A stretch of 64,000 nucleotides of DNA from Narcine bancroftii. Taxonomy: Eukaryota. The stretch covers positions 305,350,001-305,414,000 of the forward strand of contig NC_091469.1 in NCBI RefSeq assembly GCF_036971445.1, in the 5' to 3' direction. The notes beneath the pieces were generated by a model. It was not told where the DNA came from. It made no database searches and was given only the letters and a program-made list of their open reading frames with translations. Positions 17,026 to 64,000 of the stretch are shown in pieces (within the stretch, counting starts at the first letter, position 1; the number at the start of each line of letters is the position of its first letter). The position numbers and the translations under genes are program-made.

Positions 17026-18460
17026 ACATGGCGGCACTGCTGGACCCACAATAGCACTGTAGCAGTACTGGTGCGGACCCACAGGGAGTGAGGGAGCGGA
17101 GATGCAGAATCCAGCCGCCCAGTCGACTGCTGTTGGCTCCACGTGGGCCTTGAATGGCCCATCAAGGGAGCCAACTGTGGTTTTAGCTGAAATCCTGCAT
17201 CGGGAGGTGTGCACCCAAGATGGTGGAGCTTATTAATCAGCAGCCACGAGGAGCTGAAGATTCTTTGTCATTTTCTATGTCCTCAATGTCAGAACAATTC
17301 ACTACCTTAAAGGCAAACACAATGTGAATTATCACCAGACATCTTTAATAGCAAACTATAAATGTTAATTTAATTTGTAATCAATTATTTACAGTTCTTC
17401 TAGATGAACAGAATAATAAATTAAGCCTTTAGAACATACAGTTTGAAAAACAGAGGAAGTCTGATTAGAAAACATCATTATATCCTATGATAAGATAATC
17501 AAACCCCACTCTACAATTTTCCAAGAAAGATACATGCACAAGAAGAATCCGACAGGGAATGCGGAGCAAGCAATAATGAAATAAAATATTTCCAAATAAT
17601 TTTGCAAATACCAAGCGCTATTTAAATGATATCAAAATAACTATATGAACAACTTTAAAAATATTCCCTGAAAGTTTCATTTCTTATTTTCCTCAGAGAT
17701 AATGGCAGAATGTGACTAGGAAACCATGAAATATTTGGAAGATGTTGAAATTCAGCCAGTTTAATTAGAGTATTTTTCATTCCTGGCAGCTGGAGAGGGT
17801 TTAAAAGTGACCAATAGATTGGCAATACCGAGCAATGATTGTTAGAAAGGGGGGGGGGGGGGGGGAGAATAAAGCAGAAATATGAGGAACGGAGGAGAAT
17901 ATTGCAAAAGGCGATGAAATTACAAGAGAGACCAGAAGATTGCAGAGAATGAAGAATTACGATAGATTTGCCATATAAAGCAGTATCACCCACATGTCCT
18001 GGCCAATAAACTAGATGAGAAAAGCACTCAAACAGCTGGATCTGGCAACTACAATCACACTTCAGCTGCTGGCATTTAAAGATCCTGGGAAATAGAGTTC
18101 TTGCCCATCAAGTTCAAATGGATCCCAAAATTGAAAGAAAAAAACAATTTAAATATTATAACCTCTTTTTCACCTCTCCAGTGGAATGTTTCATGATCAC
18201 ACTGGAAATAGTACTAGTTGTTTGGTCCTACATTTTGAAACATCTGTTAATCTGTCATAGGTTGGACTGGTTCACATCCCTGAACCAGTTAAACTCAATC
18301 AGTTAGACATTTTAACAAAATGGAAATGAGGGAGTGAATCGACAAAACAAACATAAAATTATAAATGCTTCATTCCTTTGCACACAGTAATGTAGGAAAG
18401 TAAAAGTGTAGAAAAAAATTACAGCAAATCATTTATTCTTTCTGTTACAAGCTTCTCAAG

Positions 18461-24560: not shown

Positions 24561-24774
24561 CTTATTTCCTATGTTATTTTGGTGATCCCTTTGTTGAAGA
24601 ACTGCCTCTGTGTAATCTGTGTTATGTCCTCAGTTGTACAATCGGAGGTCTTAAAAAACTTTAAGAAAGGCTTGTAGGTTTAGAAGCACAAATCTTTACT
24701 CACATCAGGTACTGGTCATGTATTGGTACACTCACACTGAGCATGCTCACCATCAAGTGTGATGCGGCTCTTAC

Positions 24775-24835
24775 AGTCTTGCAGTGTTCATGCTCCAGCA
24801 TAAAATAGTCCCAAGTTTCCTCTGTATATAACAAT
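24775..24835 (-). pseudogene. IFTAP: Probable decayed small IFTAP exon (IVMDEG...GDLNRAG type)
   Basis: Acceptor tttttatcAG and donor GTAAGA. Reads IVIYRGNLGLFYAG, then after a 1-nt shift MNTAR, resembling a recalled rodent NWC segment IVMDEGQKVGSSFQGDLNRAG. Similarity is weak and from memory. Confidence 0.45.
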
Positions 24836-24876
24836 CTGATAAAAATCAAAACACATGTAACTCGATATGTTAAACT

Positions 24877-25035
24877 CTGCATTTCAGGGTCCAAACGCAT
24901 TTTCATCATCCTTAAATAACTGTCCTCCCTTTTCAAGATAGTATGTCACTACTTCCCTCATATCCAGGCATTTTCTAGCATCTTCTGCTATCTTCATAAA
25001 GGCAGGAGGTGACAGGTTTTGTTTCTTCAGGTCTT
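24877..25035 (-). pseudogene. IFTAP: IFTAP/NWC next exon, frameshifted and lacking a donor
   Basis: Strong acceptor ttttttatttccAG. The phase-1 join gives EDLKKQNLSPPAF..., open until TGA at 24886-24884. The +1 frame ends ...LDPEMQ, like the EEQ end of the orthologous exon, but no GT follows. Length 159 nt is one more than a phase-1-to-phase-0 length. Confidence 0.6.
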
Positions 25036-25126
25036 CTGGAAATAAAAAAAACACCATCATTACATTGAAACTTTAAACTATTTTTGTTCACAAGTCAAAA
25101 GGTTTGGCATTAGTTTCATCAAGAAG

Positions 25127-25128
<2 letters not shown>

Positions 25129-25159
<31 letters not shown>
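25129..25159. repeat. (AT)n microsatellite
   Basis: Direct observation. Confidence 0.95.
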
Positions 25160-25164
<5 letters not shown>

Positions 25165-25750
25165 TTCCCAACAGTATCAGATAGATGTTTTCGCTGTAAG
25201 AAGGAAATGGGAAAACAGTACATGCAATTTGGGCATGTGAGAAAGTGGAAAATTTTTGAAAAGATCTAAATCAGGTATTAAATAAAATTACAAAAAGCAA
25301 CATACCAAAAAATCCAGAGATATTTCTTCGAAGTAATATAAGAAGTAAAGAATTAGGTCTCAAACTGGATGAAGCGCAAAAAAAGATTTATTATGATAGC
25401 CTTAGCTGTAGCAAAAAAATGTATTAATGTCAACCTGGAAATCAGAAGAGAGCCTAAGAGTACAGCAATGGTACATTGAGAAGAATAAATGTATTCCATT
25501 GGAAAAAATAACATATAATTAAAAAAATAAAGTCACATTATTTGAACAAATTTGGGAACCGTACATGGAACACAACAGAGAGGGCTTGCCTCGGACCTCC
25601 ACCCCCTAAAATGAAAGAATGAGAAGAAGACGAAATGAACTGACCCAGTGTGTAAAAGTAGATGACACAATTTTCTTGCTTATTTTCATTGTGTGATGAC
25701 ATTGTTTAATGGGTTTATTGTATTGTATATGTTGTATGTTTAATGGGTTA
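25160..25750 (+). mobile_element. L1/Tx1-type LINE 3' end
   Basis: Decayed ORF2 C-terminus PEIFL...FIMIALAVAKKC...WK...PLEK...FEQIWEPYM plus 3'UTR. Confidence 0.7.
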
Positions 25751-25989
25751 TATATTTTATTGAGTAATCTGTGTGAAGGAAGATCATAGCGGCATCTGAA
25801 CCTGCACTCAAAAACATGAAATTCTATATGTGTTAGGACTTTTGCATAGATTCCTCAATGCAATATTGGTACAAACAATCTTTTGTTGCACAATTGACTT
25901 AAAAAAATCCCCTCTCATTTTACTTGCTGCCACTTAGAACATCAAGCACATGTACAGCCAAACAATACATTTGTAGGGCAAGTCTTTAG

Positions 25990-27020
25990 CTATACAAAAA
26001 TAAATAAATAAATAAATAGATACTGTTTTGTGAATATGAGCATTTCGGTAGGCCAGTGGGCACAGTTCCTTTGGTCATTCAGCATTCTCTGGGAAGAAGC
26101 TGTTCCTCGGCCTGGTGGTGCTGGCTCTGATACTCCTGTATCTCTTTCCTGCTGGGAGCAGCTGAAAGATGCTGTGTGCAGGGTAGAAGGGAACCTCAAT
26201 GATTTTGCATGCCCTCTTCAGACAAAGATCCAGCAGTTAGATCATATTGATGGGGGAAGGGAGACTCTAGTGATCCTCTATGCCACTCCTATATTCCTGT
26301 GGATTATCTTCCAATCCATTTCTCAGCAACAACCGAACCAAACGCTCTTGAGAGAGCCGGCCAGCACGCTCTCGATAAAGCTCCTATAGAAGGTTCACAT
26401 AATTGTGGCTGGTAGCTTTGGCCACTTCATTCTTCTCAGGAAGTGTTGTTATGCCTTCCTGGCAAGTGAGGAGATGTTGAGTGTTCACTAGTTAAGTGAA
26501 CTCCAAGGAACTCAGTGCTCTCCACTCTCTCTACTACCATAATGTTGATGTATAGTGGAGGGTGGTCATTCATGGTCCTCCTGAAGCCCACGATCATTTC
26601 CTTCATCTTGCCTATGTTGAGACTCAGGTTGTTATTCTCGCACCATTTCATGAGATTTTCCAATTCCTCTCTGTACTCTTCATTGTTGCTTATGAGGCCG
26701 GCTACTGTTGTACCATCCACAAACTTGATGACACTGTTAGAGCTGGAGATGTGTTAGTAGCATGAGCACACAGCCTGAGGTGCACTAGTACTCAGCATGA
26801 TGGTGCTCGATTCTCTGCTACTGACCCGGACAGACTGAAGCCCAGAATCCAGTTACAAAGAGGGGGAGTTGTCCCAGTGAGGAGAGTTTATCCACCAGCT
26901 CTGGGGAATGATTGCATTAAACACCAAGCTGAAATCAATGAAGAGCAAGCAGCCTGTTCTCCAGGTGGATCAGGATGGATTGAAGGGACAAGGCTATAGC
27001 ATCATCTGTGGAACAGTTTC
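25990..27020 (-). mobile_element. Rex1/Babar-type LINE fragment
   Basis: DGTTVAGLISNNEEYREELENLMKWCENNNLSLNIGKMKEMIVGFRR. Confidence 0.85.
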
Positions 27021-30000
27021 TTCTATATTCTTCAGGTTGGTCAGGAAAGAAGGAAATCAAATTGAGTCCTCCTTGAGACAAGTCCCTCATAACAAGTCCG
27101 AAGATCAATTCTTCAATAGCAGCTGGGAAAGGTCAACAAGGATAGCAATTCACTGGGGAGGATGTGGGGAGTTTAGATGCCCATTTGTGAAGACTAATAA
27201 ACCCTGAGCACAGCTACAAAAAAAACACACAAAAATGCGAATGAACGGCGACACAGTTGGTGCAGCTGTTAGCGCAACGCCTTTACAGCACCAGCGATTG
27301 GGGACCAGGATTCAAATCCCACGATGTCTGTAAGGAGTTTGTACATTTTCCCGTGTCTATGAAGATTTTTTCCTCGGGGCTCCAGTTTCCTCCCACTGTT
27401 CAAAATGTACCAGGGGTGTTGGTTAATTGAGCGGCACAGACTCGTGGGCTGAAAATGGCCTGTTGTCGTGCTGTATTTTGGCTTTACATCAAGAAAGCTG
27501 AAATCCATAAATTGTACACAATTTGGATGAGATCCCTTGGTTGTTTTCCATTAGCTTTTCTGATTGCCTTTTCATCTCTGCTGATTTTCACAATAACAGA
27601 TAAATCCCTATCCTCCTTCGAAATTGGACATACCATCAAAAGAATATTCAATTTGTTTTCTCAGCTCATAATGATTGGCATCATATTCTGCACTAAAATG
27701 TATCTGCCATCATTACACTCTTTCAGTTACTCTGCACTTTTCTAACTTCCTGCCGCAATACACACTGGCTTCTAACTCTCCGTTTCCAACTTGTTTATAC
27801 TATTATACATGCCATCATTCAAAACTTTAGTATGATGAAAAGATATGATTTCACTACGTTTCTAGGTAACATTACTTATTACATCCAATATGCAGAAAAT
27901 AAACTATTTATTCCTTTCTCTACTTAACATGCAACAAGTTTACTCCAATTCGGATTGCTCTTTTTCACATTCTTCTCATCTTCAGACAAGGGTAGACATA
28001 CGGCACAGTTACAGGGCCTTTCAGCCCACGTCCCCATGCCACCCAATTACACCCAATTGACCTACGTGTTTTGAATGGTGGGAGAAACAGACACTGGGAA
28101 AACGAACAAATTCCTTTCAGACAGCACCGGATTCTAACCCGTGTCGCTGGCTCTGTGGCAGCGTGGCACTAACCACTATGCTAACTATTCCATCCTTCTC
28201 TTTGCAAGTACCATAAATCTATTTCCTCTCACTTTTAATGCGGAATGAAATTAAGGGATCATAAACTCTATGAGCCAAATGGCCTCCTTTGGTGTTGTAA
28301 ATATGATCATTAGAGAGCAATGATACTTAAATACACTTAAATATGCTGCCCAATTGCGTTTGTTAATTGCAGATTTGAACTGGTGACACGCAAATAATTT
28401 TGGGAAAAACTCAATTTGAAGAAATACACTTTTTAAAAGTTTGCCATTTTAGCTACAAATTGTGCCAGAGTTGCCTTTTACACTTAATGTAGAATATTTG
28501 TTTTTTTTTTTCTGCCATAAGGGAGCATAGTAGACTAGCTGCAGAACTCGTTATCCTCTGAGATAGACTTGATTCCTCTTTAGTTATGTGGGGTCTGACA
28601 TAACAGCTGAGGTAAATGCAAAACCCACAGGTGAAGCAGGTTGGGAGGAGGTGCACACCTTCCACTACTCATGTTGAGCTTCTGTGTGCTTATGAAGAAT
28701 TTACTCAAGGTTCTCAATAGCCACTTAAATTATTTTTCTATTTATTTAGTCAGTCATGGATCAGTATTCCCCCATGTTAGGTTCATTCAAACGTTCAAAG
28801 AGATTTTGGTGCCTGTTCCAAGAATCTGCCACCATGGTCTGCCCATCAAGTCAATTCAATGCAATTAGGATCTCAATGCTGGGAGAGAATTATAACTGGG
28901 GTTTGCTTATGCTGCCTGTGTTTTGAAGGATTTTGCAAAGACCTTATTGGTGATTTCTGCATGATTTGAGATACCTGCTGCAGATAGTCCTTGTCTTAGA
29001 GATAGAAACTCATTGCAGCCAGGAAATGTAAAAGTCACCCATGACACAAATACCAAGAATCCTGCCTCAGCTAAAGCCATAAATGAGGATGAACTCTTCA
29101 GTGAGTTAACATCCACAGGAAGGAACACTTGGAAGACCTTCTCAATTCTGACTCTGTCCTCGACACAAAGCCCTTTGATTCCACCGCACAAAAAACCCAT
29201 TTAAGCCAGCATGGCTACCACTTCAGATTAACAAGAAGTTGAAAAAAATATCTTAAAAGAGAGTTTCAAACAGGAATCTACAATCTGGTAAGAGCAGGAG
29301 AGGCCAGAAGAATTATGGATAGGATCATCTTAATCACCATTTTAAAAAAAAAGGAGACAATTCTGGTAACCATAAAGGAATCTCTCTCCTGTCTGCTACA
29401 ATGTAAGTTATTGTCAGGGTTCTTTTGAACTGTCTCCTTCCAGTGGGTGAAGAGATGCTTACGAACTACATTGTTAATTATCATGTCCTTCTCTAGGCAC
29501 AATGGACAAGACCTTCATGCACAATTCTCAGAAAAATTCAAATAGCAGCAACAGCCTCAATACACAGCCTTATTTAACCTTCTCTTTCCTTTTAAAATAT
29601 TTTTATTGATTTTAATAAATAACATACAAACAATAAAGATATAATTCAGTAAGATTATATGGATAGTTACACAAACAAAATAAGACATTCCATTTAACAC
29701 TAACATACATAAATTGTAAATCATATCCATGATTCATATTCGAAATACTATCTACCTTTTTTTGGAAAAAAAAACCTCTAATAATGCAAAAAAAAGTGAA
29801 AGAAAATAGAAAAGGAGAAAACTAAAACTCCTTACCTATAACCACATTGCCAGATGCTTATAGGATTGGTATTAAAATAAAAACAAAGGTAAAAAAAATT
29901 AATATAAAGAACGTGGAAAAGATACAATTAAACAATTTAATATTATTTAACCTTATCAAACCCTTTGAATCTATCTATCACAAGAGACTGTGGAACACAC

Positions 30001-30289
30001 TCCTCAAATTCAGATCCTCACAGAAATTGGTCGGCCACTGATACAATCTCAGTCCTACATCCCCAGCATCGATGCTCTGCTACACCCAGACCACTACACT
30101 GGGCATGTCACTTGCAGGCCCAATTTTAGACTCCATTACCACCTGACCTGGCTTATTGAAGATTCCACTCCACAACATTAGTCAGCCACTCCGTTCAGAA
30201 GCGGTCAGTAAGTGTTGGCTGAGATAGCGATCCCCAAATAAATAAAATAAATTCTACCTTTTTTAATTCAATCTAACAGAACTGCTTAC

Positions 30290-30434
30290 CTTCTCTGAGG
30301 TGTACAAATGACTTCAGAAATTGCTCATACGCTTGCTCATGGCTCTTGCAGAACTTTTCCGATGCATCACAGGTTATTCCTTTCTTCTCCGTAATTCATA
30401 CTCTTGACATGAATAGCATATCTAATGCATTTTT
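30290..30434 (-). pseudogene. IFTAP: IFTAP/NWC (C11orf74) first coding exon with in-frame stop
   Basis: Acceptor ttgcAG and donor G|GTAAGC (phase 1). Translates MLFMSRV*ITEKKGITCDASEKFCKSHEQAYEQFLKSFVHLRE, matching the recalled IFTAP motif [36 protein letters not shown]. Syntenic: antisense to and upstream of RAG2. TGA at 30398-30396; ACG at 30392-30390 where orthologues have Met. Confidence 0.85.
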
Positions 30435-32914
30435 CTGCAATAAAAAGAAAGTATAACAAATTATACTGTATAATACCTATAATCATTTCATATCAAAGAT
30501 ACAAATATTTTCAGTAAATGAGTAAATTCAAGGCAAATAGAATGAGGGGAAGAAATTCTTTAAGTCAAATCAAATAACATGTGCTGAGCTAGCATATTTT
30601 AATTCCAAGCAGTTCAATGAAACTTGATATTTAATAGGAATTGATAATTGGTTATGTTTTTAATTGACAGTGTTATAGATAACTTGCAAATGAATGAAGA
30701 ACAAACTTGTGCTTATCCTGCTCTCAAGTACAAATAAATTATAAGTGCACAGCATTGCAGTCACCTCTGTTGTGTAAGTAAATCTAGTGTCAATTTGGAC
30801 TCAATAATTTCTCACAAACTCCAAAATAGATGAATAAATTAATTAATCCAATTTTGTTGCCATTCATGGCGCCACATATTGCTCCTTCAAATTTTGCAAC
30901 CAATTGGATATACGGGCAACCCATTCTGATCCTATTATTTTCTAAATGCTCAAAATTCAAGAATTATGGAGAAACATATTTATGTTAAAGTATGGAAATG
31001 AACGCTAGTGAACCAAGAAAAAAAGTTTTCAGAGAGCTGGAATGTAAAGGGAATGAACTTAAGTGACAGTTAGAGATAAAATCACAAAGTACTGAATCAA
31101 GTTTGAGACACCATATCTTTGGATTGATGTATGAAGCTATATTGACCTTGGGAGTTTTGGGGCGAGATGGAGGGCCATGCTGGTGCACACAGGTTTACCC
31201 AAACAATATAGGGATGAAGACAGAATGTACAGCTCAAGCTTGGTGATCTGATTGATCTGTCTGATATAAATTAAAGGTGTATCACAGAGCATAACTTTAA
31301 AATTACAGCTGTGCCATCAAGGATGGTATCAGGAAAGAAAATCAAAAATAGTAGTAGCCCATACATTTCAACAGGGCTGGGGTTTTTTTCATTGAATAAG
31401 ATCATGTTCGAACTTTTACATCAACTTCATTTTCCCACTTCAAATATTGGGCAGCTTGCCACCAGAAATCTACAGACACTAGCTGAGTTGAAAATGTTAA
31501 AACCAAAATCATTAGACTGGTGTTAAGTAAGGTATTACAGGATGATACTGGACTAAAGATATAGATCAATTTTGATCAAGCTAAATGGAGCATCATGCAT
31601 TAAGGTTTCAATAAAGCAGAATATCATCAAATAATATTTTTCATTTAGATTTTTTATTGAAAATATAGGTTACCCTATTTTGTGATCATGACTTCTAATA
31701 AGGATTAAAATAACTGTTTATAAATGTCTAATGTTTTAATCAGAAACAAAAAAACATCAAATTGTGAACCTGAATATAGTTGATATTTTCAAAATGATTT
31801 ACTTTTCAACAATGAAACCAGGATTCTACATCACAAACACTTCAAAACATAACAGTTAAAATCTGTAACACAGCATGCATTCAACTTCTGCAAATGTGTT
31901 CTTCGGGGAATTGTGGATGAACCAGCACAAGATGTTTACACAAGGCAACCTCAATGATTTATGCAAAACTTAGCGGTTTGGTAACAGGAAACATAATTAT
32001 CTATTGTTCTGACTTCTACCATGGATAACTACATTGGGATACCTACAAGCTGCTGCAGTATTTTAAATTTGTCTGAAAACGTTGTAGGTAATACCCTTTG
32101 AGTAATCACACAATTTATTTGTTGACATAATAACTGACATCAAGAAGTGAACATGATCCCTTGGGGAACACTCAAGTTATCAAGTAAGTGTTCATATTAT
32201 TTGTTCATAATGTGACTGTGTTATACAAATAATTGTGCGAGAATGCGAACAGAGCTACAGCAGATTGTAATCTTTCATAGGTCTTTGATAAAAATGAACA
32301 AAATCAATTTCCTCAAATGCAATGAAGAGATACAATTGTGTTTTTCATGCTCTATGATGGCATAAAATATGCCTCTACTAACAAAGTATAACTTCCACAA
32401 ACAGTGATTGAGATGTAGTAACCTGCTGTTGTGTGGTTTATAGTGGAAGAAAAATACTGGTGAGGAAACCAGGAGAACACACCACTCTAATAAAGAGTCA
32501 CGGTAACTTTCAAATCTATGAAGTTGGTCATATGACCCACCAAGTCCTCGTCAAACATCAAGCACCCACCAGTCTACTCAAATCTCTCTTTTATACACCA
32601 TTTCTCCATTCAACTCTGCTGTGATTCTACAACTCACCATATACTCAGGCCAATTAACCTACTAACGTGTGTGTTTTTGGAATGTTTGGGGGTAACTGAA
32701 GTCACGGAAGGAAATGAGGAAACCCATTCAGTCATATGGGAGAAAATGCTAACTCCACCCTACAGTGCAGAAAATCTGGGCTGAAGCTGGGCTGCTGGAT
32801 CTGCTTGGCAGAGCCCTTCTAGTTTGCCAGTGATACACTGGTGGACAATTATTAGCCCAAAAGTCCCCTTAATTTCAAAATCTGCCATATATTATAATTT
32901 AGAAAATAGTAATA

Positions 32915-37193: not shown

Positions 37194-38118
37194 AGAGCCA
37201 GCTCTTCAGCGCTGGACGTCCTGTTTTGCGGAAACTGCCAAAATGTTTGGCCTGGAAGTCAGCCTGAAGAAAACTGAGGTCCTCCATCAGCCAGCTCCCC
37301 ACCATGACTACCAGACCCCCACATCTCCATCGGGCACACAAAACTCAAAACGGTCAACCAGTTTACCTATCTCGGCTGCACCATTTCATCGGATGCAAGG
37401 ATCGACAACGAGATAGACAACAGACTCGCCAAGGCAAATAGCTCCTTTGGAAGACTACACAAAAGAGTCTGGAAAAACAACCAACTGAAAAACCTCACAA
37501 AGATTAGCGTATACAGAGCCGTTGTCATACCCACACTCCTGTTCGGCTCTGAATCATGGGTCCTCTACCGGCATCACTTACGGCTCCTAGAACGCTTCCA
37601 CCAGCGTTGTCTCCGCTCCATCCTCAACATTCATTGGAGCGACTTCATCCCTAATATCGAAATACTCGAGATGGCAGAGGCTGACAGCATCGAATCCACG
37701 CTGCTGAAGATCCAACTGCGCTGGGTAGGTCATGTCTCTAGAATGGAGGACCATCGTCTTCACAAGATCGTGTTATATGGCGAGCTCTCCACTGGCCACC
37801 GTGACAGAGGTGCACCAAAGAAGAGGTACAAGGACTGCCTAAAGAAATCTCTTGGTACCTGCCACATTGACCACCGCCAGTGGGCTGATATTGCCTCAAA
37901 CCGTGCATCTTGGCGCCTCACAGTTCGGCGGGCAGCAACCTCCTTTGAAGAAGGCCGCAGAGCCCACCTCACTGACAAAAGACAAAGGTGGAAAAACCCA
38001 ACACCCAACCCCAACCAACCAATTTTGCCCTGCAACCGCTGCAACCGTGTCTGCCTGTCCCGCATTGGACTTGTCAGCCACAAACGAGCCTGCAGCTGAT
38101 GTGGACATTTACCCATAA
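37194..38118 (+). mobile_element. RTE-clade LINE 3' fragment (tail missing)
   Basis: Same RT C-terminus (AEADSIESTLLKIQLRWVGHVSRM...SHKRACS); stops before the terminal hairpin. Confidence 0.93.
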
Positions 38119-39171
38119 GTAAAGCAGATACCCACGCAACTAAAATCATTGTTTGTTTAGCTCCGAGACTGGAAACTAAGACTACGAATTAAGATTAGAT
38201 TGTAAGGACGTCACTCCCTTTCTTCGGCTCCCTGATGGCCCAGCTTATGACTCTACATCTCAAGCATAGGCAGTCCTGGTCCCTTAACTACACAGTTATC
38301 ACTGTCTTGGAATCCACTGCTATGTGTATTTTGAGGTCAGCCTTTTGCCAATGTCTGGCTTCTCACAATTTCTCTAAATAGTCACCAAACAGTGCGATAA
38401 ATGACACCAGTGGCTATAGGCAGCGAGCTTCCTTCCTTTAAGAAATGCATGCATGCTCTCAATTAATACAGGTTACTTTCAGTGTAGCTCAAAACTCCTG
38501 AAATTGATCCCTGTTACAGACTAACACTGAAAAATTTGCAAGATTGCTACTACCACATCAAGTCAAACTGGCATGGATCCCAGCACAACCATTTTAGCAT
38601 GTGGTTTGCTGCATGGACATATTAACCATATAACCATATAACCGTTTACAGCACGGAAAAAGGCCATGTCGGCCCTTCAAGTCCGAACCGGTTCACTTGA
38701 ACAACTCCACTAGCTCCTCCGCAAACTCCTGAGGAAGTAGAGGCTTTCTTCAATGTCGCACATCAGAGGTAATAATCAGAAGACTAATAAAAGAAAATAT
38801 TTAAAATTTAAAACAATTATATTAATCAATCATTTGGATCTCCCCTAGAATATGAACATTTATCCCACTTGTAGCGAGTCCTGAAAATTATCCAAAAACA
38901 CAATCAAGGACAATTCTCATTATGGATCAAACACAAAAAAAAAAATTAAAGCAATAATTATTTCACAATCCTTTTTCCATATAAGTACATGTTTCTTAGG
39001 ATTTACAAGCCCTTTTTTATCTCTTAGCAATGACGATCTGTAAGATAATTTTGGGGACAAAATATTTTTTACAATGAGCTGATCTCACATTCATTGCATC
39101 TTGTATTTGTACAACAATCATAATTACCTTGATTATATAAGGCTTCCATTTTATAATTTTAAAAAATCATA

Positions 39172-39563
39172 TTCTTCTCTTTGGCTTGGCTTCGCGGACG
39201 AAGATTTATGGAGGGGTAATGTCCACGTCAGCTGCAGGCTCATTGGTGGCTGACAAGTCCGATGCGGGACAGGCAGACACAGTTGCAGCGGTTGCAAGGG
39301 AAAATGGGTGGGTTTGGGTTGGATGTTGGGTTTTTCCTCCTTTGTCTTTTGTCAATGAGGTGGGCTCTGCGGTCTTCTTCCAAGGAGGTTGCTGCCCGCC
39401 GAACTGTGAGGCGCCAAGATGCATGGTTGGAGGCGAGATCAGCCCACTGGCGGTGGTCAATGTGGCAGGCACCAAGAGCTTTCTTTAGGCAGTCCTTGTA
39501 CCTCTTCTTTGGTGCACCTCTGTCTTGGTGGCCAGTGGAGGGCTCGCCATATAACACAATCTT
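39172..39563 (-). mobile_element. RTE-clade LINE 3' fragment
   Basis: KIVLYGE...CLSRIGLVSH plus hairpin and tail; AATCATA repeated in both flanks. Confidence 0.93.
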
Positions 39564-40301: not shown

Positions 40302-40670
40302 AGCTCTCCACTGGCCTCCGTGACAGAAGTGCACCAAAGAAGAGGTACAAGGACTGCCTAAAGAAAGCTCTTGGTGCCTCCCCCATTGACCACCGCCAGT
40401 GGGCTGATCTCGCCTCCAACCGCGCATCTTGGTGCCTCACAGTTCGGCGGGCAGCAACCTCCTTGGAAAAAGACCGCAGAGCCCACCTCACTGATGAAAG
40501 ACAAAGGAGGAAAAACCCAAAACCCAACCCCAACCCACCCATTTTCCCTTGCAACCGCTGCAACCGTGTCTGCCTGTCCCGCATCGGACTTGTCAGCCAC
40601 AAATGAGCCTGCAGCTGACGTGGACATTACCCCTCCATAAATCTTCGTCCGCGAAGCCAAGCCAAAGAAG
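40302..40670 (+). mobile_element. RTE-clade LINE 3' fragment
   Basis: LSTG...RYKDCLKKAL...CLSRIGLVSHK plus hairpin and tail. Confidence 0.93.
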
Positions 40671-41126
40671 ACAATATCCTGTGCCACAAATACTAAAACA
40701 TGATTTATTCCAGCAGCCTTTTCCATGAAACAATTTCTTCCAACATTTGTTCTCACTTTCCAAACAGTGTTTAAGTTGATAACTCCTCTTACGGATTTAC
40801 CAGTTTGTGGAAGTATAACTCATCTTAGCTCTACAAAAATCAAATAGGCTCAGTACATCTGGCATCAGTGGCCTAGATGTTACGGCATAACGCATAGAAC
40901 ACATGCCTAACCTAAGTTTGAATTCTATATCTGAGAATTTGCCTAACAGACTGGTTAAAGTTTGAAAGAATTTAAAAGAAATCCTTAGCCTTGTTCCTGA
41001 TAATTCATTGAATCTAATAAAATTTCCAGTGAAAGGGAGTCTTCTTCAATCAGTACGCCAATGATTGCAGTCAATAAAAATTAGGAGATTGCCTACAGAG
41101 TGCTGCCTTCCACATGTATGTGAGTG

Positions 41127-41289
41127 NNNNNNNNNNNNNNNNNNNNNNNNNNNNNNNNNNNNNNNNNNNNNNNNNNNNNNNNNNNNNNNNNNNNNNNNNN
41201 NNNNNNNNNNNNNNNNNNNNNNNNNNNNNNNNNNNNNNNNNNNNNNNNNNNNNNNNNNNNNNNNNNNNNNNNNNNNNNNNNNNNNNNNN
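41127..41289. other. Assembly gap (163 N)
   Basis: N run. Confidence 1.
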
Positions 41290-44085: not shown

Positions 44086-45700
44086 TACAAAAACAAAGGC
44101 GAGAAATCAGACTGCTCAAACTACAGGGGAATCACATTGCTCTCCATTGCAGGCAAAATCTTCGCTAGGATTCTACTAAATAGAATAATACCTAGTGTCG
44201 CCAAGAATATTCTCCCAGAATCACAGTGCGGCTTTCGCGCAAACAGAGGAACCACTGACATGGTCTTTGCCCTCAGACAGCTCCAAGAAAAGTGCAGAGA
44301 ACAAAACAAAGGACTCTACATCACCTTTGTTGACCTCACCAAAGCCTTCGACACCGTGAGCAGGAAAGGGCTTTGGCAAATACTAGAGCGCATCGGATGT
44401 CCCCCAAAGTTCCTCAACATGATTATCCAACTGCACGAAAACCAACAAGGTCGGGTCAGATACAGCAATGAGCTCTCTGAACCCTTCTCCATTAACAATG
44501 GCGTGAAGCAAGGCTGTGTTCTCGCACCAACCCTCTTTTCAATCTTCTTCAGCATGATGCTGAACCAAGCCATGAAAGACCCCAACAATGAAGACGCTGT
44601 TTACATCCGGTACCGCATGGATGGCAGTCTCTTCAATCTGAGGCGCCTGCAAGCTCACACCAAGACACAAGAGAAACTTGTCCGTGAACTACTCTTTGCA
44701 GATGATGCCGCTTTAGTTGCCCATTCAGAGCCAGCTCTTCAGCGCTTGACGTCCTGCTTTGCGGAAACTGCCAAAATGTTTGGCCTGGAAGTCAGCATGA
44801 AGAAAACTGAGGTCCTCCATCAGCCAGCTCCCCACCATGACTACCAGCCCCCCCCACATCTCCATCGGGCACACAAAACTCAAAACGGTCAACCAGTTTA
44901 CCTATCTCGGCTGCACCATTTCATCAGATGCAAGGATCGACAATGAGATAGACAACAGACTCGCCAAGGCAAATAGCGCCTTTGGAAGACTACACAAAAG
45001 AGTCTGGAAAAACAACCAACTGAAAAACCTCACAAAGATAAGCGTATACAGAGCCGTTGTCATACCCACACTCCTGTTCGGCTCCGAATCATGGGTCCTC
45101 TACCGGCACCACCTACGGCTCCTAGAACGCTTCCACCAGCGTTGTCTCCGCTCCATCCTCAACATCCATTGGAGCGCTTTCATCCCTAACGTCGAAGTAC
45201 TCGAGATGGCAGAGGTCGACAGCATCGAGTCCACGCTGCTGAAGATCCAGCTGCGCTGGGTGGGTCACGTCTCCAGAATGGAGGACCATCGCCTTCCCAA
45301 GATCGTGTTATATGGCGAGCTCTCCACTGGCCACCGTGACAGAGGTGCACCAAAGAAAAGGTACAAGGACTGCCTAAAGAAATCTCTTGGTGCCTGCCAC
45401 ATTGACCACCGCCAGTGGGCTGATAACGCCTCAAACCGTGCATCTTGGCGCCTCACAGTTTGGCGGGCAGCAACCTCCTTTGAAGAAGACCGCAGAGCCC
45501 ACCTCACTGACAAAAGGCAAAGGAGGAAAAACCCAACACCCAACCCCAACCAACCAATTTTCCCTTGCAACCGCTGCAATCGTGTCTGCCTGTCCCGCAT
45601 CGGACTGGTCAGCCACAAACGAGCCTGCAGCTGACGTGGACTTTTTACCCCCTCCATAAATCTTCGTCCGCGAAGCCAAGCCAAAGAAAGAAAAAAGAAG
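44086..45700 (+). mobile_element. Young RTE-clade LINE copy with one +1 frameshift
   Basis: Near-identical to the 49.1-50.8 kb copy. A C8 run (C7 in the other copy) at about 44848-44855 splits the ORF. Candidate TSD AATACA at 44084-44089 and 45701-45706. Confidence 0.95.
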
Positions 45701-50823: not shown

Positions 50824-51256
50824 CCCACCATGAATTAATCTCTAGTTGAAGTACACTCAACCCCACACAGGCCTCTAAAGATTTAAAAATTCCTTTGATT
50901 CTATACCCACTGATGTTCTGAAGGAAGAACAATACTCAAAATCAGAAAAATACCCTGAGCTAGAATTCCAAAGATATGGAGTCTACAGTATGAATATTTA
51001 TTGAAAATGAATTCTTGTAACAATGTGGGAATACAATGACAGTGTGTATTGTTAAGAAGTCAATTTGCTTGATACTCTCATGAATAGCACAAAGCAAAAC
51101 TGTAAGTAATTCAGTTTTAAAATATCTTATTAATCATCAGTTTATAGCTAAGTAACAGCATTTATACACGTAATGTCAAAGAATGATCAGCTCACCATCC
51201 TTACATTCTGTAATAATCAGTATGTCTTGATTTTCTTTTCATTTCTAACCTAATTT

Positions 51257-51303
51257 TACATTCAGTTTCCTTTCAGAGGTCCAACCAGAATTCTACTGCA
51301 ACA
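51257..51303 (+). other. RAG2: Splice acceptor and 27-nt 5'UTR part of the RAG2 coding exon
   Basis: Polypyrimidine tract ttcagtttcctttcAG; exon starts at 51277, 27 nt before the ATG. This matches the acceptor position I recall for mammalian RAG2 and implies upstream non-coding exon(s). Confidence 0.8.
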
Positions 51304-52863
51304 ATGATTCTGCAAATGGTTTCAGAGAAGACCACTACGAACCTCATCCACCCAGGATTCTCCTTATTGAATTTTCACAATGAAATCTTTCTTTTTGGAC
51401 AGAAAGGGTGGCCTAGAAGATCCTGCACCACAGGTGTTTTCCTTCTTCATCTCAAGGGTCATCAAATGAAGCTTAAACCCGTTTCATTTTCATCTGACTC
51501 ATGCTACCTTCCACCATTGTGTCGGCCTGCAATAACTCATTACTCTGATCCCTCAGAAACAGGAAGCCTTTTTTATCTGATTCATGGAGGGAGAACTCCA
51601 AATAATGAGCTGCTTAATTCACTATATGTCATGGTGGTTCATGACAATTCTGCCAAAAAGAGAACATCTCTTTGTTGCAGCGAAAAGAACATAAAAGGAA
51701 ATGTCCCCAAAGGAAGATATGGCCACACCATCAATGTGATTCAAAACAAGGGACAAACTATATGTGTCTTGCTTGGAGGTAGAACCTACCTTCCTCCTGG
51801 TCAAAGAACCACAGAAAACTGGAACAGCTTAGTGGATTGTTTGCCTGAGATTTACCTTATTGATATGAACACTGGCCTTTGCACATCCCACAGGCTTCCA
51901 GAAATAGAAGAAGGTTTTTCATTCCATGTTTCCATTTCAAAAATTGATACTGTCTATGTATTAGGTGGACATTCCATTAAAAACAATTATCGCCCTGCAA
52001 GGTTACTGAGTCTGAAAGTAGATCTTTCAGATGATTGTCCAAGTGTAAAATGTACAATACTGGATGGAGGCATCTCTGTATCAAGCGCTATAGTGACCCA
52101 GTCGGGTAGAGATGAGTTCATCATTGTTGGTGGCTATGAATCTGAGAGTCAGAAGCGTATGATTTGTAACACCATCGCTTTGGAGAATGATAACATTCAA
52201 ATTTTAGAAAAGGATCCCCCAGTATGGACTTGCGATATCAAAGCAAGCAAAAGCTGGTTTGGCAGTGATATGGGAAGCAGTAAAGTGTTAATAGGAATTC
52301 CAGGAGAAACAAAGCAAAATGTATCAGATGCAAACTACTTCTATATAGCAAATTTTGGAGAGCCAAAAGAAGAGAGCCAAATGTCTGCCAGCCAGGAATC
52401 CTTTACCGATCCCGAGGAATGCAGCACATTTGAAGATTCAGAAGAATTTCATTTTGAAGTGGATGCAGGTCCCTCTGATGATATGGAAAACTTGGACGAC
52501 GGTGATGAAGAAGGATACTGGATCAAATGCAGTTCCATCTGCAATCTAAATATCAAGATCTGGGTGCCTTATTACTCGACAGAATTCAATAAACCCGCAA
52601 TGATCTTCTGTTCGAATACAGGTGATGACGGACACTGGGTCCATGCTCAGTGCATGAATCTTACCGAATCACAGCTCATTCAATTCTCTCAAGAGAACAT
52701 AAAGTACTTTTGCAATGAGCATTATATTGACAGAGGAATTAAAACTCCACACAAGAAGAAGCAGCTAAAGCGAACACCAATAAAATCCCCACGCAAGAAG
52801 TCACCAGCAACATTGAAAAGGACACCAATGAAGAAGAGCTTTCTCAAGAGACTGTTTGATTGA
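51304..52863 (+). CDS. RAG2: V(D)J recombination-activating protein 2 (519 aa, single coding exon)
   Basis: Intact ORF with RAG2 hallmarks: LFGQKGWPRRSC, IHGGRTPNNE, GRYGHTINV, LLGGRTYLPPGQRTTENWNSLVDC (kelch propeller), acidic hinge (FEDSEEF...DDGDEEG), PHD finger (GYWIKC..C...KPAMIFCS...GHWVHAQC...YFCNEH) and C-terminal TP sites ending KKSFLKRLFD. Confidence 0.99.
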   Translation: MILQMVSEKTTTNLIHPGFSLLNFHNEIFLFGQKGWPRRSCTTGVFLLHLKGHQMKLKPVSFSSDSCYLPPLCRPAITHYSDPSETGSLFYLIHGGRTPNNELLNSLYVMVVHDNSAKKRTSLCCSEKNIKGNVPKGRYGHTINVIQNKGQTICVLLGGRTYLPPGQRTTENWNSLVDCLPEIYLIDMNTGLCTSHRLPEIEEGFSFHVSISKIDTVYVLGGHSIKNNYRPARLLSLKVDLSDDCPSVKCTILDGGISVSSAIVTQSGRDEFIIVGGYESESQKRMICNTIALENDNIQILEKDPPVWTCDIKASKSWFGSDMGSSKVLIGIPGETKQNVSDANYFYIANFGEPKEESQMSASQESFTDPEECSTFEDSEEFHFEVDAGPSDDMENLDDGDEEGYWIKCSSICNLNIKIWVPYYSTEFNKPAMIFCSNTGDDGHWVHAQCMNLTESQLIQFSQENIKYFCNEHYIDRGIKTPHKKKQLKRTPIKSPRKKSPATLKRTPMKKSFLKRLFD

Positions 52864-59961: not shown

Positions 59962-62900
59962 TCAAAATAAATCATTATCATCTATTGGGTTATTTTTGCT
60001 TATTATTGCATCGGGGTCAAATGGAACTGTTAAATTTTCCAATGTTTTCTGCATGTACATGAACCTCTGTAAATACTTTGAAGTATACAACCAGTGGTGC
60101 TTCAGAATATCTTCTAACTCATAGCTCTTGGACTGCCTTGCATTCATCTTTCTGAAACGCCGGAAGAGCTTATTGCCTGATTCATTCCCTTCACTTGCCC
60201 ACGCCCCTATTGAGCCATCTCTTTCAATGATCTCAGGGACATGAGCCAAAGTCTTATGAAGGTAGTTGGTGATCTTCCCATCATATCGGTACTTGAATTT
60301 GGTGCAAAGAAGTTCGGCAAATCTCTGGGAATGAAAGCTGTACTGGCAAAGAAGATCAGGGCACTCTCTGTTTGGGAATGTGGATCGCCACACAGGTTTC
60401 ATGAGAATGTAAAGTTGCATCAGCTCTCTGAGAATCTCTCGTCTTTCTGCAGAGGGAATCAACTCGCACACTGCTTCCACAGTCTCTTTAGTCATTAATT
60501 TCCTTGCAAAGTTTCCATTCAGCCTCATGATGGGTTTCAGGTTCATCCTCTTCCGAAGATGCTTATCGAGCATTGTTTGCCACCTTTTCCTTTCCTCCTT
60601 AGACGGGTGGGGATTTTTGTGCATCTCTCCAATCTCATCCTGGAACAGCTTGTAGAATTCAGTTGCATTCCCAATGTCACAGTGCAGGGCATCAATGGAG
60701 GGCTGTGTCTCGATGAATGGTTTTGCAGAAACCCCCTTCACTCTATCGCGTAACTCCTCAGCTGTCTCATGATATGGATTTGTACGCCAAATCTCATAGC
60801 GTTCCAAATTCTCTTCATGGCTCCTTGTTATGGAATGAAGGATCAAATTTTGTGAAGCCTCCGCTCGAGTGGCATCACATAATGTGCACACGTACATAGA
60901 GCCTGAGGCTTCAAGGCCTTCGATTTCACGGACCAGCTTTTCGTCATACCCCGTGCCTTTGAAAATAAACTGAAAGGACCTGAGCAAATCCCCAATTTCA
61001 AGGATTAAATCACTGTTTTTCATTGCTTCCCGTTCTGCAACTACTGGACCCAGTATGGCTGTCAAGGTTTCGTGGTCAGATTCATCTGCCAGCATCAGGC
61101 AAAGTGGCTTGCAGCACAACTCAGAATTTGGCTTTAACTCTTCAAAGATCTTTACTATTTCATTATTTTCATTCACCACACTTATAGTCATGATCGTAAA
61201 AGAATACCTCACTGCCTTTTCTGGAACTGAAGGGCCACATCCATGTTTTTCACTAACATCCCCCATTCCATCACAGGACTCTTTGATTGTCACAGTAAAT
61301 GGTCCACCAAAACATTCATCTATATTTTGGCTTTTTAAACCTTCCAAAATGTTATCCTCAAGATCTTTCAGCGCCGAAACAATTGCCACATCATATCTAA
61401 ATCGTCTTGAAATTGTTTCCATTGAGCAATCATCAATATAACGTGGCCAGCCACATGTGCCATCTATTATTCCCACGTCTGCTTTGGTGGAGACATTTGC
61501 TAGAGGAGGTTCCCATTCAAATGAATAATAACCTGGCAACAATGTCTTCTCTGTGCTTCGGAGTACATGCAGTGGTTGGAAGATTTGCTTCCCAGTAGCT
61601 GCTTTAACGGTTTTGTACATTTTATGGTACTGACTGCAACTCAGAAATGTACTGACCCTGATGGCAAGAGAGACTGCTGGTTTCAGCGTCGATCCTTGTC
61701 CTTGCATGAGAGCTTCCAGTTCATCTGCTTGTCTGTGCTCATTTCCAGCTCTCAATACTAACAGAAACAGAGTGAGGCACACTGATTTCACATCACCACC
61801 TTCCTCCTTATCCGCAAATGCCTTCACCTGAAGTTTGAGCTTTCGTAGACGGTGTTTCTGAGCCCTGCGTGTGAGAGAGAGTAAATGTTGCCGTGGCCGG
61901 CCACCCTTGTTTATTGGTGAGTAGGCATGCAACATTCTTGTTTCTTTGTGATTCTTGGCATGATTGGGATATTCACCAAGTCTCACCTCCTCTCCACAGT
62001 CTGTCACTGGGCACTTTAGAACTAATAAACTGAGGACACTTAAGAAAGATTTCACTGGGCTTTTGAAGTCTGAAGAATCACAGGGAAACCAACAAACTGG
62101 ACAATATTTTCCTAACACTGTGGTACATTTGAGAATGCATGTTCTGCAGAAAAGGTGCTTGCAGGGTGTCTGCACAGGATCAGCCAGCAAGTGCTCGCAG
62201 GCCTGGCATGTCACAGACTGAATAAAGTTATTGGGATAATCAAGCACAAGAAGCTTTGAATTTAGATGGCACTTCTTGCAGTTCACAATCTTTTTAGCCA
62301 GTGAAATGCTCACTGAATTTATTTGATCTTGTCTTTTAACAATCCTTGATCTAATTGGTATATCAACTGTTATTTTGGGCTTCTTAGCGACTGGAGGACT
62401 TCGCTTAAGAACTTTACGTTTGCGAGGGCCACTAGGAATATTGCACATGCTGCAAAAAGTGGAGTGTGGTTTCCACTGCACAGTCGTGCCAATGGGAAAG
62501 AATGCATCTTCGTTGGTTGTGTTGTTGATTGTCTGAATAATAATACGCCAACAATTGTAGCAAAAGTGGGTGGGATGCCTGGCTTCCAAATCCGTCCTGA
62601 CATCTATGTTAAATGTGTTGTGGATGAGTTCTGGCCAAAAACTGTTTCCGAATCCCATTTTTCGCAGAACCTCTTGGGTGACCTCATCAACAGAGCCATT
62701 GACTGGGTATTTCATGTCATAACTGTTAGTATCAAAGGAAACTCCACAGATGCGGCAGAGATTTTGCAATCTTAACATATGTTCTTCTGAAGATTTTGTT
62801 TCCATTTGCCTATATTCATAAAATTTGGCTTTTGGTGGGCCGACCTCTGAGGACATATGTTCCAGGGATTTATCTTCCAAAGTCTTCTTGTCCAAGGGCA

Positions 62901-63096
62901 ATGTTTCCAAGGACATAACTCCCAGTGGCTTGATCTGAGGGGATGACATTTGCCACATTGGACTATGAACTGGCAGAACAGCCTGAGACTCAAAAGCCTC
63001 TGCTGCAGAAATGTTGGCTTTCTTTGGGACATTATCTGCTAGTCTGGTTTCTGAATTCCTGAAATATTCAGGAATTATTTGCATAGGCATTTCCAT
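59962..63096 (-). CDS. RAG1: V(D)J recombination-activating protein 1 (about 1044 aa, intronless CDS)
   Basis: CND (LCRICG...[10 protein letters not shown]...WKPH), C3HC4 RING (CQACEH...CKHLFCRTC...CPVC), [14 protein letters not shown], catalytic ESCDGMGD / GTGYDEK / SEGNESGNK. The ORF track starts at 63165, but a splice acceptor (ctccattAG; exon starts 63115) lies 19 nt before the ATG at 63096, so M24 is the likely start. Confidence 0.99.
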
Positions 63097-64000
63097 TTCC
63101 ACGAGAAAGTGATATCTAATGGAGACATAAGAGTGATTATTGATTAAAATGGGATCACTGTTCATCCTCTTAGTTTAAGACAGTATGCTTTACATTCAAC
63201 GTTAACATGGTTAGCACACCAGTCAGTCCAATGTTGTTACATCGCCAGCAACTTGGGTTTGAATCCAGTGCTGTCTCTAAGGAGTTCTCCCTGTGTCTGC
63301 ATGGATTTCCTCTGAGTGTTCTCATTTCCTACCACCATTCAAATGCATACCAGAGGTATAAGTCAATTGGGTGTAATTGGGCAGCACAGACTCGTGGTCT
63401 GAAAGGGCCTGTACTATTGTCTACGTCTAAATCTTTAAAAAATTTAATTCAAAATGTAAAAACAACATTCTCATTTCAATGCTAACATTGTGCTTTTCAT
63501 TCCAAGTGGTATCGATCATAAAGTTAATCAAATCTAATTCAATATGAGAAAGTGAAATATAATTTAACTTGCTTGGCAGGAAACTGCAGAGTTAAGTAAT
63601 CCACTCTGTCAGGGTGTGAAACAGTCCCCTATGAGTAGATTAAATTAAAGTCACCTCTAGCATTTGATGGTGATAGGGGAAAAAATGAACCTGGGCCTTA
63701 CAAACTAATTCTGCTTAACCTTGGTGATGGAAAGACTTTGAAAAATAAATAATCCCAAAGAAACTTAGCAGGACTTGGTTAAATATATGGTAATAATGGA
63801 AAACTAATACAGAGTTAAAGACAAATCATGTGACAATTTTATTGCATTTACTTTTGATGAGGCAACAGAGAAGATGGGTGAGAACCGCAGAGCTGATGTT
63901 TTGAATGTAGACATTAAAATTATCTTTCAATTAGCCTGTTAACCTAATCCTTCAATTCGTATTAAACTATTTGAACTAAATTGAAGACCATGGAATAGAA

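What the first reader, a model, noticed from the sequence alone, without database searches (positions are those of the whole stretch)
24775..30434. IFTAP/NWC, the conserved third gene of the RAG locus, is present but looks pseudogenised
Seen: minus-strand exons with canonical splice signals, absent from the ORF track, encoding EKFCKSHEQAYEQFLKSFVHLRE|EDLKK. Lesions: in-frame TGA at 30398-30396 after the only upstream ATGs; ACG at the position of the conserved internal Met; a +1 frameshift and stop in the next exon (24886); no GT donor after ...PEMQ, with only 41 nt to the next acceptor; and a further 1-nt shift in the following small exon. Established: IFTAP (NWC/C11orf74) lies antisense to RAG2, with its promoter in the RAG2 5' intron, and has been proposed as the host gene whose bidirectional promoter aided RAG transposon domestication. 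Inference: this lineage lost the IFTAP protein while keeping intact RAG1 and RAG2, a natural test of whether the RAG-NWC linkage is kept for the protein or for cis-elements in its introns.
Basis: partly seen in the sequence, partly recalled or inferred. Interest (0 to 1): 0.82.

Follow-up and report, generated by a model that had tools for sequence, protein, structure and literature searches.

The report
Decaying IFTAP gene beside ray RAG2
An electric-ray genome still carries recognisable pieces of IFTAP/NWC, the conserved neighbour of the RAG genes, but it has lost its start codon and two splice donors, so it is most likely a dying gene, which is a modest finding because IFTAP already goes unretrieved in squamates.

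Summary
The window holds intact, convergent RAG2 (51304-52863 +) and RAG1 (59962-63165 -). It is most likely Narcine bancroftii, because the RAG2 protein matches exactly.

Three collinear minus-strand IFTAP exon remnants lie upstream of RAG2: A 30434-30290, B 25035-~24896 and C 17305-17258.

Confirmed lesions, identical in read contigs of the same species:
- The TGA at 30398-30396 is real. A diverged relative appears to share it while keeping ATG two codons later, so it probably lies in the 5' leader.
- ACG replaces the conserved Met (30392-30390). The relative and the horn shark both have ATG, so this is the real start loss.
- Exon B runs into TGA (24886-24884) and has no usable donor.

- The '+1 frameshift': similarity to IFTAP simply ends after KDDE.
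- The 'small exon' 24838-24775: it lies mostly in a high-copy repeat.

New here:
- Exon C also lacks a donor and hits a stop.
- The conserved C-terminal half is absent from the 17 kb downstream.
- Exons diverge from the relative as fast as introns.
- One probable RNA run shows no transcript contig on exon A and none listed on exon B.

Verdict: probable lineage-specific pseudogene (about 0.6). Only one mis-modelled orthologue could be retrieved, and sequence left of the window was not visible. IFTAP is already listed as unretrieved in squamates.

The parts
30290..30434 (-). IFTAP exon A: 5' leader, ancestral start region and conserved domain 1. Strong acceptor (ttattgcag|) and donor (AAG|GTAAGC).
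   Evidence: Pfam IFTAP 11-43, E 1.7e-6; tblastn 30389-30291 to Heterodontus IFTAP, 61%; donor 10.9 bits.
30417..30419 (-). ATG that aligns without gaps to Met1 of the Heterodontus model. Here it opens only a 7-codon ORF.
   Evidence: register: query 3-34 = P0002 11-42.
30396..30398 (-). In-frame TGA at codon 8 of the Heterodontus numbering. Real in reads, and apparently shared with the diverged relative C.
   Evidence: X1 contig identical; the X6 contig covers the site, with differences listed at 30391 and 30401 but none at 30396-30398.
30390..30392 (-). ACG (Thr) at the conserved Met10. The relative C and Heterodontus have ATG. Context is A at -3 and G at +4.
   Evidence: (30391 G>A on the + strand in X6).
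24896..25035 (-). IFTAP exon B (EDLKK...KDDENA), phase 1, strong acceptor. Its 3' end is undefined because no donor is present.
   Evidence: (tblastn 25048-24896, 47%).
24884..24886 (-). In-frame TGA three codons after the tblastn alignment ends (five after KDDE, where the similarity ends). Confirmed in two independent read sets.
   Evidence: X1 24809-25119 and X5 24866-25016, 0 differences.
24840..24901 (-). 61-62 nt unique stretch that replaces the expected exon end and donor. The relative's contig stops matching at 24902.
   Evidence: table 8: X6 record 17 is laid on 24902-25077 only, with 243 further letters unlaid. Also.
24633..24833 (.).
   Evidence: depth about 4300 against about 10 for unique sequence; X7 record 23 is a 914-nt contig matching only 24633-24833; the X1 unique contig ends at 24809.
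17258..17305 (-). IFTAP exon C remnant (VVNCSDIEDIENDKES, matching Heterodontus 348-363, profile about 122-137). There is no donor, and an in-frame TGA lies at 17239-17237.
51304..52863 (+). RAG2 coding exon, intact.
   Evidence: PF03089 1.6e-145 plus PHD; exact match to an NCBI protein on the same 494-Mb contig that carries a Narcine bancroftii RAG2 isoform.
59962..63165 (-). RAG1 coding exon, intact and convergent with RAG2.
   Evidence: PF12940, 1231 bits.

Best explanation
This is the syntenic IFTAP/NWC locus of an electric ray (most likely Narcine bancroftii), and it is in the course of becoming a unitary pseudogene.

Shown:
- Three exon remnants sit in the right order and strand upstream of RAG2.
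- The conserved initiator ATG is now ACG, and the only upstream in-frame ATG is closed by TGA after 7 codons. No AUG-started ORF can therefore include conserved domain 1.
- Exons B and C each lose similarity, lack a usable GT donor and reach an in-frame stop within 5-7 codons.
- The C-terminal half that defines the family is not in the 17 kb downstream.

Inferred:
- The start loss and the loss of the exon B 3' end arose on the Narcine branch, because a relative at about 9% divergence keeps ATG and has different sequence after KDDE.
- The repeat-rich stretch at 24633-24901 reflects an insertion or rearrangement that removed the donor.
- No full-length IFTAP protein is made, while RAG1 and RAG2 stay intact.
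For: - Identity: Pfam IFTAP hit on exon A. Collinear tblastn and Smith-Waterman hits of Heterodontus IFTAP XP_067901970.1 at 30389-30291, 25048-24896 and 17305-17258.
- Lesions in reads: X1 and X5 contigs show 0 differences over the lesions.
- Polarity: the relative X6 has ATG at 30392-30390 and Leu, Pro and Val where Heterodontus has them. Both non-synonymous differences in the known CDS stretch are derived in this genome.
- Donors: none better than 2.4 bits after exons B and C, against 10.9 for exon A.
- C-terminal half: no match by motif, tblastn or Smith-Waterman, nor by Pfam on all 402 minus-strand stop-free segments of at least 20 aa in 1-25100.
- Rate: the two X6 pieces that span exons A and B (336 nt, about 73 of them flanking intron) differ from the relative at 31 of 336 sites (9.2%), against 72 of 848 (8.5%) for unique intron pieces (table 8).
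- Transcription: a probable RNA run (X7) has depth 0 on exon A, and none of its listed pieces lies on exon B.
- Promoter: no non-repeat CpG island lies between exon A and the RAG2 exon. Every CpG-rich window there is a copy of one LINE 3' end.
Against: - Only one orthologue could be retrieved, and its middle is a poor gene model (479 aa with TE-like filler). The true ends of exons B and C in elasmobranchs are therefore unknown.
- Within exons A and B, 84 codons remain open, and three of the four flanking splice sites are strong, so any decay is recent or partial.
- ACG in a good Kozak context can initiate at a low level.
- The 3' exons may simply lie left of coordinate 1 in this very large genome.
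- An intact copy elsewhere could not be searched for.
- X7 is only guessed to be RNA, and its tissue is unknown.
- The intron divergence is biased low by the 85% filter, and the per-site differences in exon B were not listed.
- That the relative shares the TGA is inferred from the absence of a listed difference.
Confidence: 0.6

Rival explanations
1. The gene is alive but unconventional. Translation starts at the ACG near-cognate codon (or by re-initiation after the 7-codon uORF). Elasmobranch IFTAP has a different middle structure, so the apparent missing donors reflect our ignorance of the real exon ends. The C-terminal exons lie beyond the left edge of the window.
For: - Exons A and B are open over 84 codons with strong splice sites at three junctions.
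- The ACG has A at -3 and G at +4.
- The relative also seems to have the TGA and must start at the codon that is ACG here.
- The Heterodontus model is itself odd in the middle.
- Pfam cannot see exons B and C even where the Heterodontus alignment is clear, so profile negatives in the middle of the gene are weak.
Against: - No in-frame continuation or donor follows exons B and C.
- The exons diverge at the intronic rate.
- There is a structural break against the relative exactly at the end of exon B.
- The strongly conserved C-terminal domains are absent from 17 kb, although the two known introns are 5.2 and 7.6 kb.
- No transcript contig is seen in X7.
Confidence: 0.27
2. IFTAP was already dead or dying in the common ancestor of this ray and the relative C, or more widely in the order. 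The TGA would be the first hit and ATG>ACG a later neutral change.
For: - The TGA is apparently shared with the relative.
- Exon divergence between the two species equals intron divergence, which fits neutrality on both branches.
Against: - The relative keeps ATG and three Heterodontus-like residues, and both polarised non-synonymous changes fall on this genome's branch.
- The repeat at the end of exon B is nearly absent in the relative.
- The numbers are very small.
Confidence: 0.1
3. The lesions are assembly errors.
For: None was found. X1 may be the sample the assembly was built from, so it is not fully independent.
Against: X1 contigs are identical over both exons. X5, from another sample and study, is identical over 24866-25016, which includes the stop.
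Confidence: 0.03

Closest known systems
IFTAP / NWC / C11orf74 (Pfam PF17722), the third gene of the vertebrate RAG locus
   Same: - It lies upstream of and antisense to RAG2, next to convergent RAG1 and RAG2, as described for vertebrates (PMC3439442, PMC4157847).
- N-terminal conserved domain 1 is recognisable.
- Exon order and strand fit.
   Different: - There is no AUG start for domain 1.
- Two exons have no donor.
- The C-terminal domains 2 and 3, which are conserved down to Trichoplax (PMC4939155), are not found in the window.
- No non-repeat CpG island lies where the mammalian promoter sits near the RAG2 coding exon.
Heterodontus francisci 'uncharacterized protein iftap' XP_067901970.1 (P0002)
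   Same: It is the closest retrievable relative: 61% identity over exon A, 47% over exon B and 10 of 16 residues over exon C. Its N-terminus lines up without gaps, including its Met1 with the ATG at 30419-30417.
   Different: The horn shark has Gln where this genome has TGA, and Met where it has ACG. It also has a complete C-terminal IFTAP domain (Pfam 2.4e-42). Its residues from about 95 to 345 look like a mis-modelled, TE-derived filler.
IFTAP among unretrieved or putatively lost orthologues in squamates (PMC13005343)
   Same: This is another jawed-vertebrate lineage with working RAG genes in which IFTAP is not recovered.
   Different: There the gene is simply not found, and high divergence is not excluded. 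Here, identifiable exon remnants with specific lesions remain at the syntenic site.

Membership tests
IFTAP/NWC (PF17722) | N-terminal conserved domain 1 (FC.SHEQ.Y..FL..F region) | tested here: met
   Pfam IFTAP positions 11-43, E 1.7e-6, 28.5 bits against a 29.3 cut-off for a 35-aa piece. tblastn to Heterodontus IFTAP gives E 4e-8.
IFTAP/NWC (PF17722) | C-terminal conserved domains 2 and 3 (profile 119-234; PF.LDEDFDYD and KPKY motifs) | tested here: not met
   Only a 16-aa remnant at the start of this region (17305-17258) is present. Motif, tblastn, Smith-Waterman and Pfam scans of 1-25100 are all negative. These exons could lie outside the window.
IFTAP/NWC (PF17722) | Position antisense to and upstream of RAG2 within the RAG locus | tested here: met
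   RAG2 lies at 51304-52863 (+) and RAG1 at 59962-63165 (-). The IFTAP exons are on the minus strand at 30434, 25035 and 17305. The literature layout is in PMC3439442.
IFTAP/NWC (PF17722) | Continuous AUG-initiated reading frame across spliced exons | tested here: not met
   The start codon is ACG and the upstream ATG is closed by TGA. Exons B and C end in stops without donors.
IFTAP/NWC (PF17722) | CpG-island promoter with a non-coding exon 1 in the RAG2 intron | tested here: inconclusive
   No non-repeat CpG island lies in 30500-51300, and the CpG-rich windows there are LINE copies. A 163-N gap (41127-41289) was left untouched, and elasmobranch promoters need not be CpG islands.
Unitary pseudogene (lineage-specific gene loss) | Disabling changes at the orthologous locus, verified in reads | tested here: met
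   X1 and X5 contigs are identical over the lesions.
Unitary pseudogene (lineage-specific gene loss) | Neutral evolution of the former coding sequence | tested here: inconclusive
   Exon pieces diverge 9.2% and intron pieces 8.5% from the relative. In the itemised stretch there are 2 synonymous and 2 non-synonymous differences. The counts are too small and the intron set is filtered.
Unitary pseudogene (lineage-specific gene loss) | No intact copy elsewhere in the genome | not testable with these tools
   No tool here searches the whole assembly. The scan's notes hold nothing on IFTAP.
Unitary pseudogene (lineage-specific gene loss) | No functional spliced transcript | tested here: inconclusive
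   X7 (guessed to be RNA) has no contig on exon A and shows no exon A-B joint. The tissue is unknown, and contigs cannot prove absence.

The most novel reading that the evidence does not exclude
Electric rays of the Narcine lineage have lost the IFTAP/NWC protein outright, by start loss, donor loss and deletion of the C-terminal exons, while RAG1 and RAG2 stay intact and in place. This would show that in at least one cartilaginous fish the half-billion-year RAG-NWC linkage does not depend on the NWC protein. A less likely variant is that the protein is still made from an ACG start after a 7-codon uORF.
Probability: 0.55. Interest if true: 0.45.

Novelty: new member of a known kind. Interest (0 to 1): 0.36.

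Why it matters
NWC/IFTAP has been proposed as the host gene whose CpG-island bidirectional promoter sheltered the incoming RAG transposon, and its linkage to RAG2 is described as conserved among jawed vertebrates (PMC3439442). A lineage with working RAG genes but a dead IFTAP would argue that the linkage is not maintained by the protein. It would also give a natural knockout of a ciliary and sperm-associated protein.

The weight of this is limited for three reasons:
- The mouse knockout has only a mild sperm-competition phenotype (PMC4939155, PMC6283527).
- IFTAP is already unretrieved in squamates (PMC13005343).
- The loss here is probable, not proven.

Tried and rejected
**Searches for more orthologues**
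- An exhaustive HMMER search with the exon A peptide gave one true hit, Heterodontus IFTAP.
- The three word-index searches found no further orthologue. The length window (263-838 aa for the 479-aa model) excludes normal IFTAPs of about 220-260 aa, and the exon B ORF shares no words with anything.
- The ESM Atlas and the PDB gave nothing.

**Ideas rejected**
- The small exon as IFTAP: it has no similarity and lies mostly in a high-copy repeat.
- Alternative acceptors between the TGA and domain 1: only AG dinucleotides in purine-rich context are present (read).
- CpG-rich windows at 20.1, 37.5, 40.4, 45 and 49.5 kb as a promoter: all are copies of one LINE 3' end.
- A ZNF143-site regular expression found nothing, but that test is weak.
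- The ORFs in the CpG island at 3.2-4.5 kb have no Pfam family.

The N run at 41127-41289 was left as it is.
Full report
**Layout and organism**

The window carries RAG2 as a single 519-codon exon (51304-52863, +) and RAG1 as a 1067-codon exon (59962-63165, -). They are convergent, and both give full-length Pfam matches.

The RAG2 protein is letter for letter an NCBI protein on a 494-Mb contig. That same contig carries the Narcine bancroftii RAG2 isoform X1, and isoform X1 maps to 51247-52860. The genome is therefore most likely the lesser electric ray.

**Is IFTAP there?**

Yes. There are three collinear remnants on the minus strand.

- **Exon A.** It begins after a strong acceptor (ag at 30436-30435) and ends at a strong donor (AAG|GTAAGC, 10.9 bits). 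Its peptide matches Pfam IFTAP PF17722 positions 11-43 (E 1.7e-6, 28.5 bits).
- **The one orthologue.** An exhaustive HMMER search with this 35-aa piece returned one true relative, P0002. This is XP_067901970.1, 'uncharacterized protein iftap' of Heterodontus francisci. It has a complete C-terminal IFTAP domain (Pfam 2.4e-42).
- **Hits of P0002 on the window.** tblastn and Smith-Waterman find exactly three collinear minus-strand hits:
  - 30389-30291, 61% identity.
  - 25048-24896, 47% identity (exon B, after the acceptor at 25037-25036).
  - 17305-17258 (exon C, 10 of 16 residues identical).
The joined model was not built or searched.

**The start region**

The alignment to Heterodontus runs without gaps. 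The ATG at 30419-30417 matches its Met1, the TGA at 30398-30396 matches its Gln8, and the ACG at 30392-30390 matches its Met10.

- A read-derived contig of the same organism (X1) is identical from 29898 to 30500.
- A diverged relative (X6, about 9% different) covers 30306-30465.
  - Its listed differences turn ACG into ATG (Met).
  - They also turn Ser into Leu, Leu into Pro and Met into Val, each time to the Heterodontus residue.
  - Three further differences are synonymous.
  - No difference is listed at the TGA, although its neighbours at 30391 and 30401 are. I infer that the relative shares the TGA, but seven of that contig's sixteen differences were not itemised.

My reading is as follows. 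In this group of rays the ORF starts at 'Met10', and the short upstream ORF lies in the leader. The disabling change in this genome is therefore ATG>ACG. No other in-frame ATG precedes conserved domain 1; the next one is 14 codons into exon B.

The ACG has A at -3 and G at +4, so weak near-cognate initiation cannot be excluded.

**Exon B**

The frame reads EDLKK...KDDENAFGP and then TGA at 24886-24884.

- X1 (24809-25119) and X5, a different sample and study (24866-25016), are identical to the window. The stop is therefore real.
- No GT between 25035 and 24833 scores above 2.2 bits.
- Beyond KDDE(NA), no frame resembles the orthologue better than shuffled controls do (observed 21-28, shuffles 24 ± 3.6). 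A '+1 frameshift' therefore cannot be claimed.
- The relative's contig matches 24902-25077 and then stops matching, with 243 letters left over. This is a structural difference exactly at the end of the exon.
- The stretch 24633-24833 is a repeat:
  - Summed contig depth is about 4300, against about 10 for unique sequence.
  - It is nearly absent in the relative.
  - The unique X1 contig ends at 24809.

**Exon C and the 3' half**

After ...DKES, the frame runs six more unrelated codons to TGA at 17239-17237. No donor there scores above 2.4 bits.

The C-terminal domains are the family's best conserved part, kept even in Trichoplax (PMC4939155). They were not found in four tests:

- Motif search.
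- tblastn.
- Smith-Waterman on all stop-free segments.
- Pfam on all 402 minus-strand segments of at least 20 aa in 1-25100.

The two known introns are 5.2 and 7.6 kb, so 17 kb without these exons is suggestive. In a genome of this size it is not proof.

**Rate, expression and promoter**

- **Rate.** The two X6 pieces spanning exons A and B (336 nt, about 73 of them flanking intron) differ from the relative at 31 of 336 sites. Unique intron pieces differ at 72 of 848 (table 8). This shows no sign of constraint, but the 85% filter trims the introns and the exon B differences were not itemised.
- **Expression.** The probable RNA run X7 has zero depth on exon A and no listed exon A-B joint. This is weak evidence.
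- **Promoter.** Every CpG-rich window between exon A and RAG2 is a copy of one LINE 3' end. No mammalian-type CpG-island promoter (PMC3439442) is visible. The N run at 41127-41289 was left untouched.

**Verdict**

This is a real IFTAP locus with several independent defects, at least two of which arose on this lineage. A unitary pseudogene is the best explanation, at about 0.6.

The main rival (about 0.27) is a live gene with an ACG start, an unfamiliar exon structure and its 3' exons outside the window. Assembly error is essentially excluded.

Novelty is modest. IFTAP is already among the unretrieved orthologues in squamates (PMC13005343), and mouse knockouts are nearly normal (PMC4939155, PMC6283527).

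Limits of this work:

- The length window of the word search kept normal-length IFTAPs out of reach.

Noticed in passing
window:3200-4500: This is the only non-repeat CpG island in the window (GC up to 0.69, CpG observed/expected 0.8-0.9). It lies about 13 kb downstream of IFTAP exon C. The ORFs across it have no Pfam family. It may be the promoter of an unannotated neighbouring gene, and if so it would bound the space left for the IFTAP 3' exons.
   Followed up: partly
window:20090-20432, 37764-38114, 39169-39563, 40302-40677, 45299-45692, 49145-49537: There are six copies, 92-94% alike, of one CpG-rich LINE 3' end (the end of the RT ORF plus its tail). Two of them belong to the inverted pair just upstream of the RAG2 exon. 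This indicates recent activity of the family around the RAG locus.
   Followed up: partly
window:25078-25750: The relative's 683-nt contig joins 25750-25946 to 24902-25077 with only about 54 nt between them. The roughly 670-nt high-copy repeat block just upstream of exon B, which includes the (AT)n run at 25120-25170, is therefore an insertion specific to this lineage.
   Followed up: no
P0002 residues ~95-345: The NCBI model of Heterodontus IFTAP (479 aa) has a middle with no IFTAP similarity and with TE-like motifs. The gene may be mis-modelled, or itself altered, in the horn shark.
   Followed up: no
window:49202-50932: A 576-codon open reverse-transcriptase ORF (PF00078, 1.2e-35) lies on the minus strand, 370 nt upstream of the RAG2 start codon.
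   Followed up: partly
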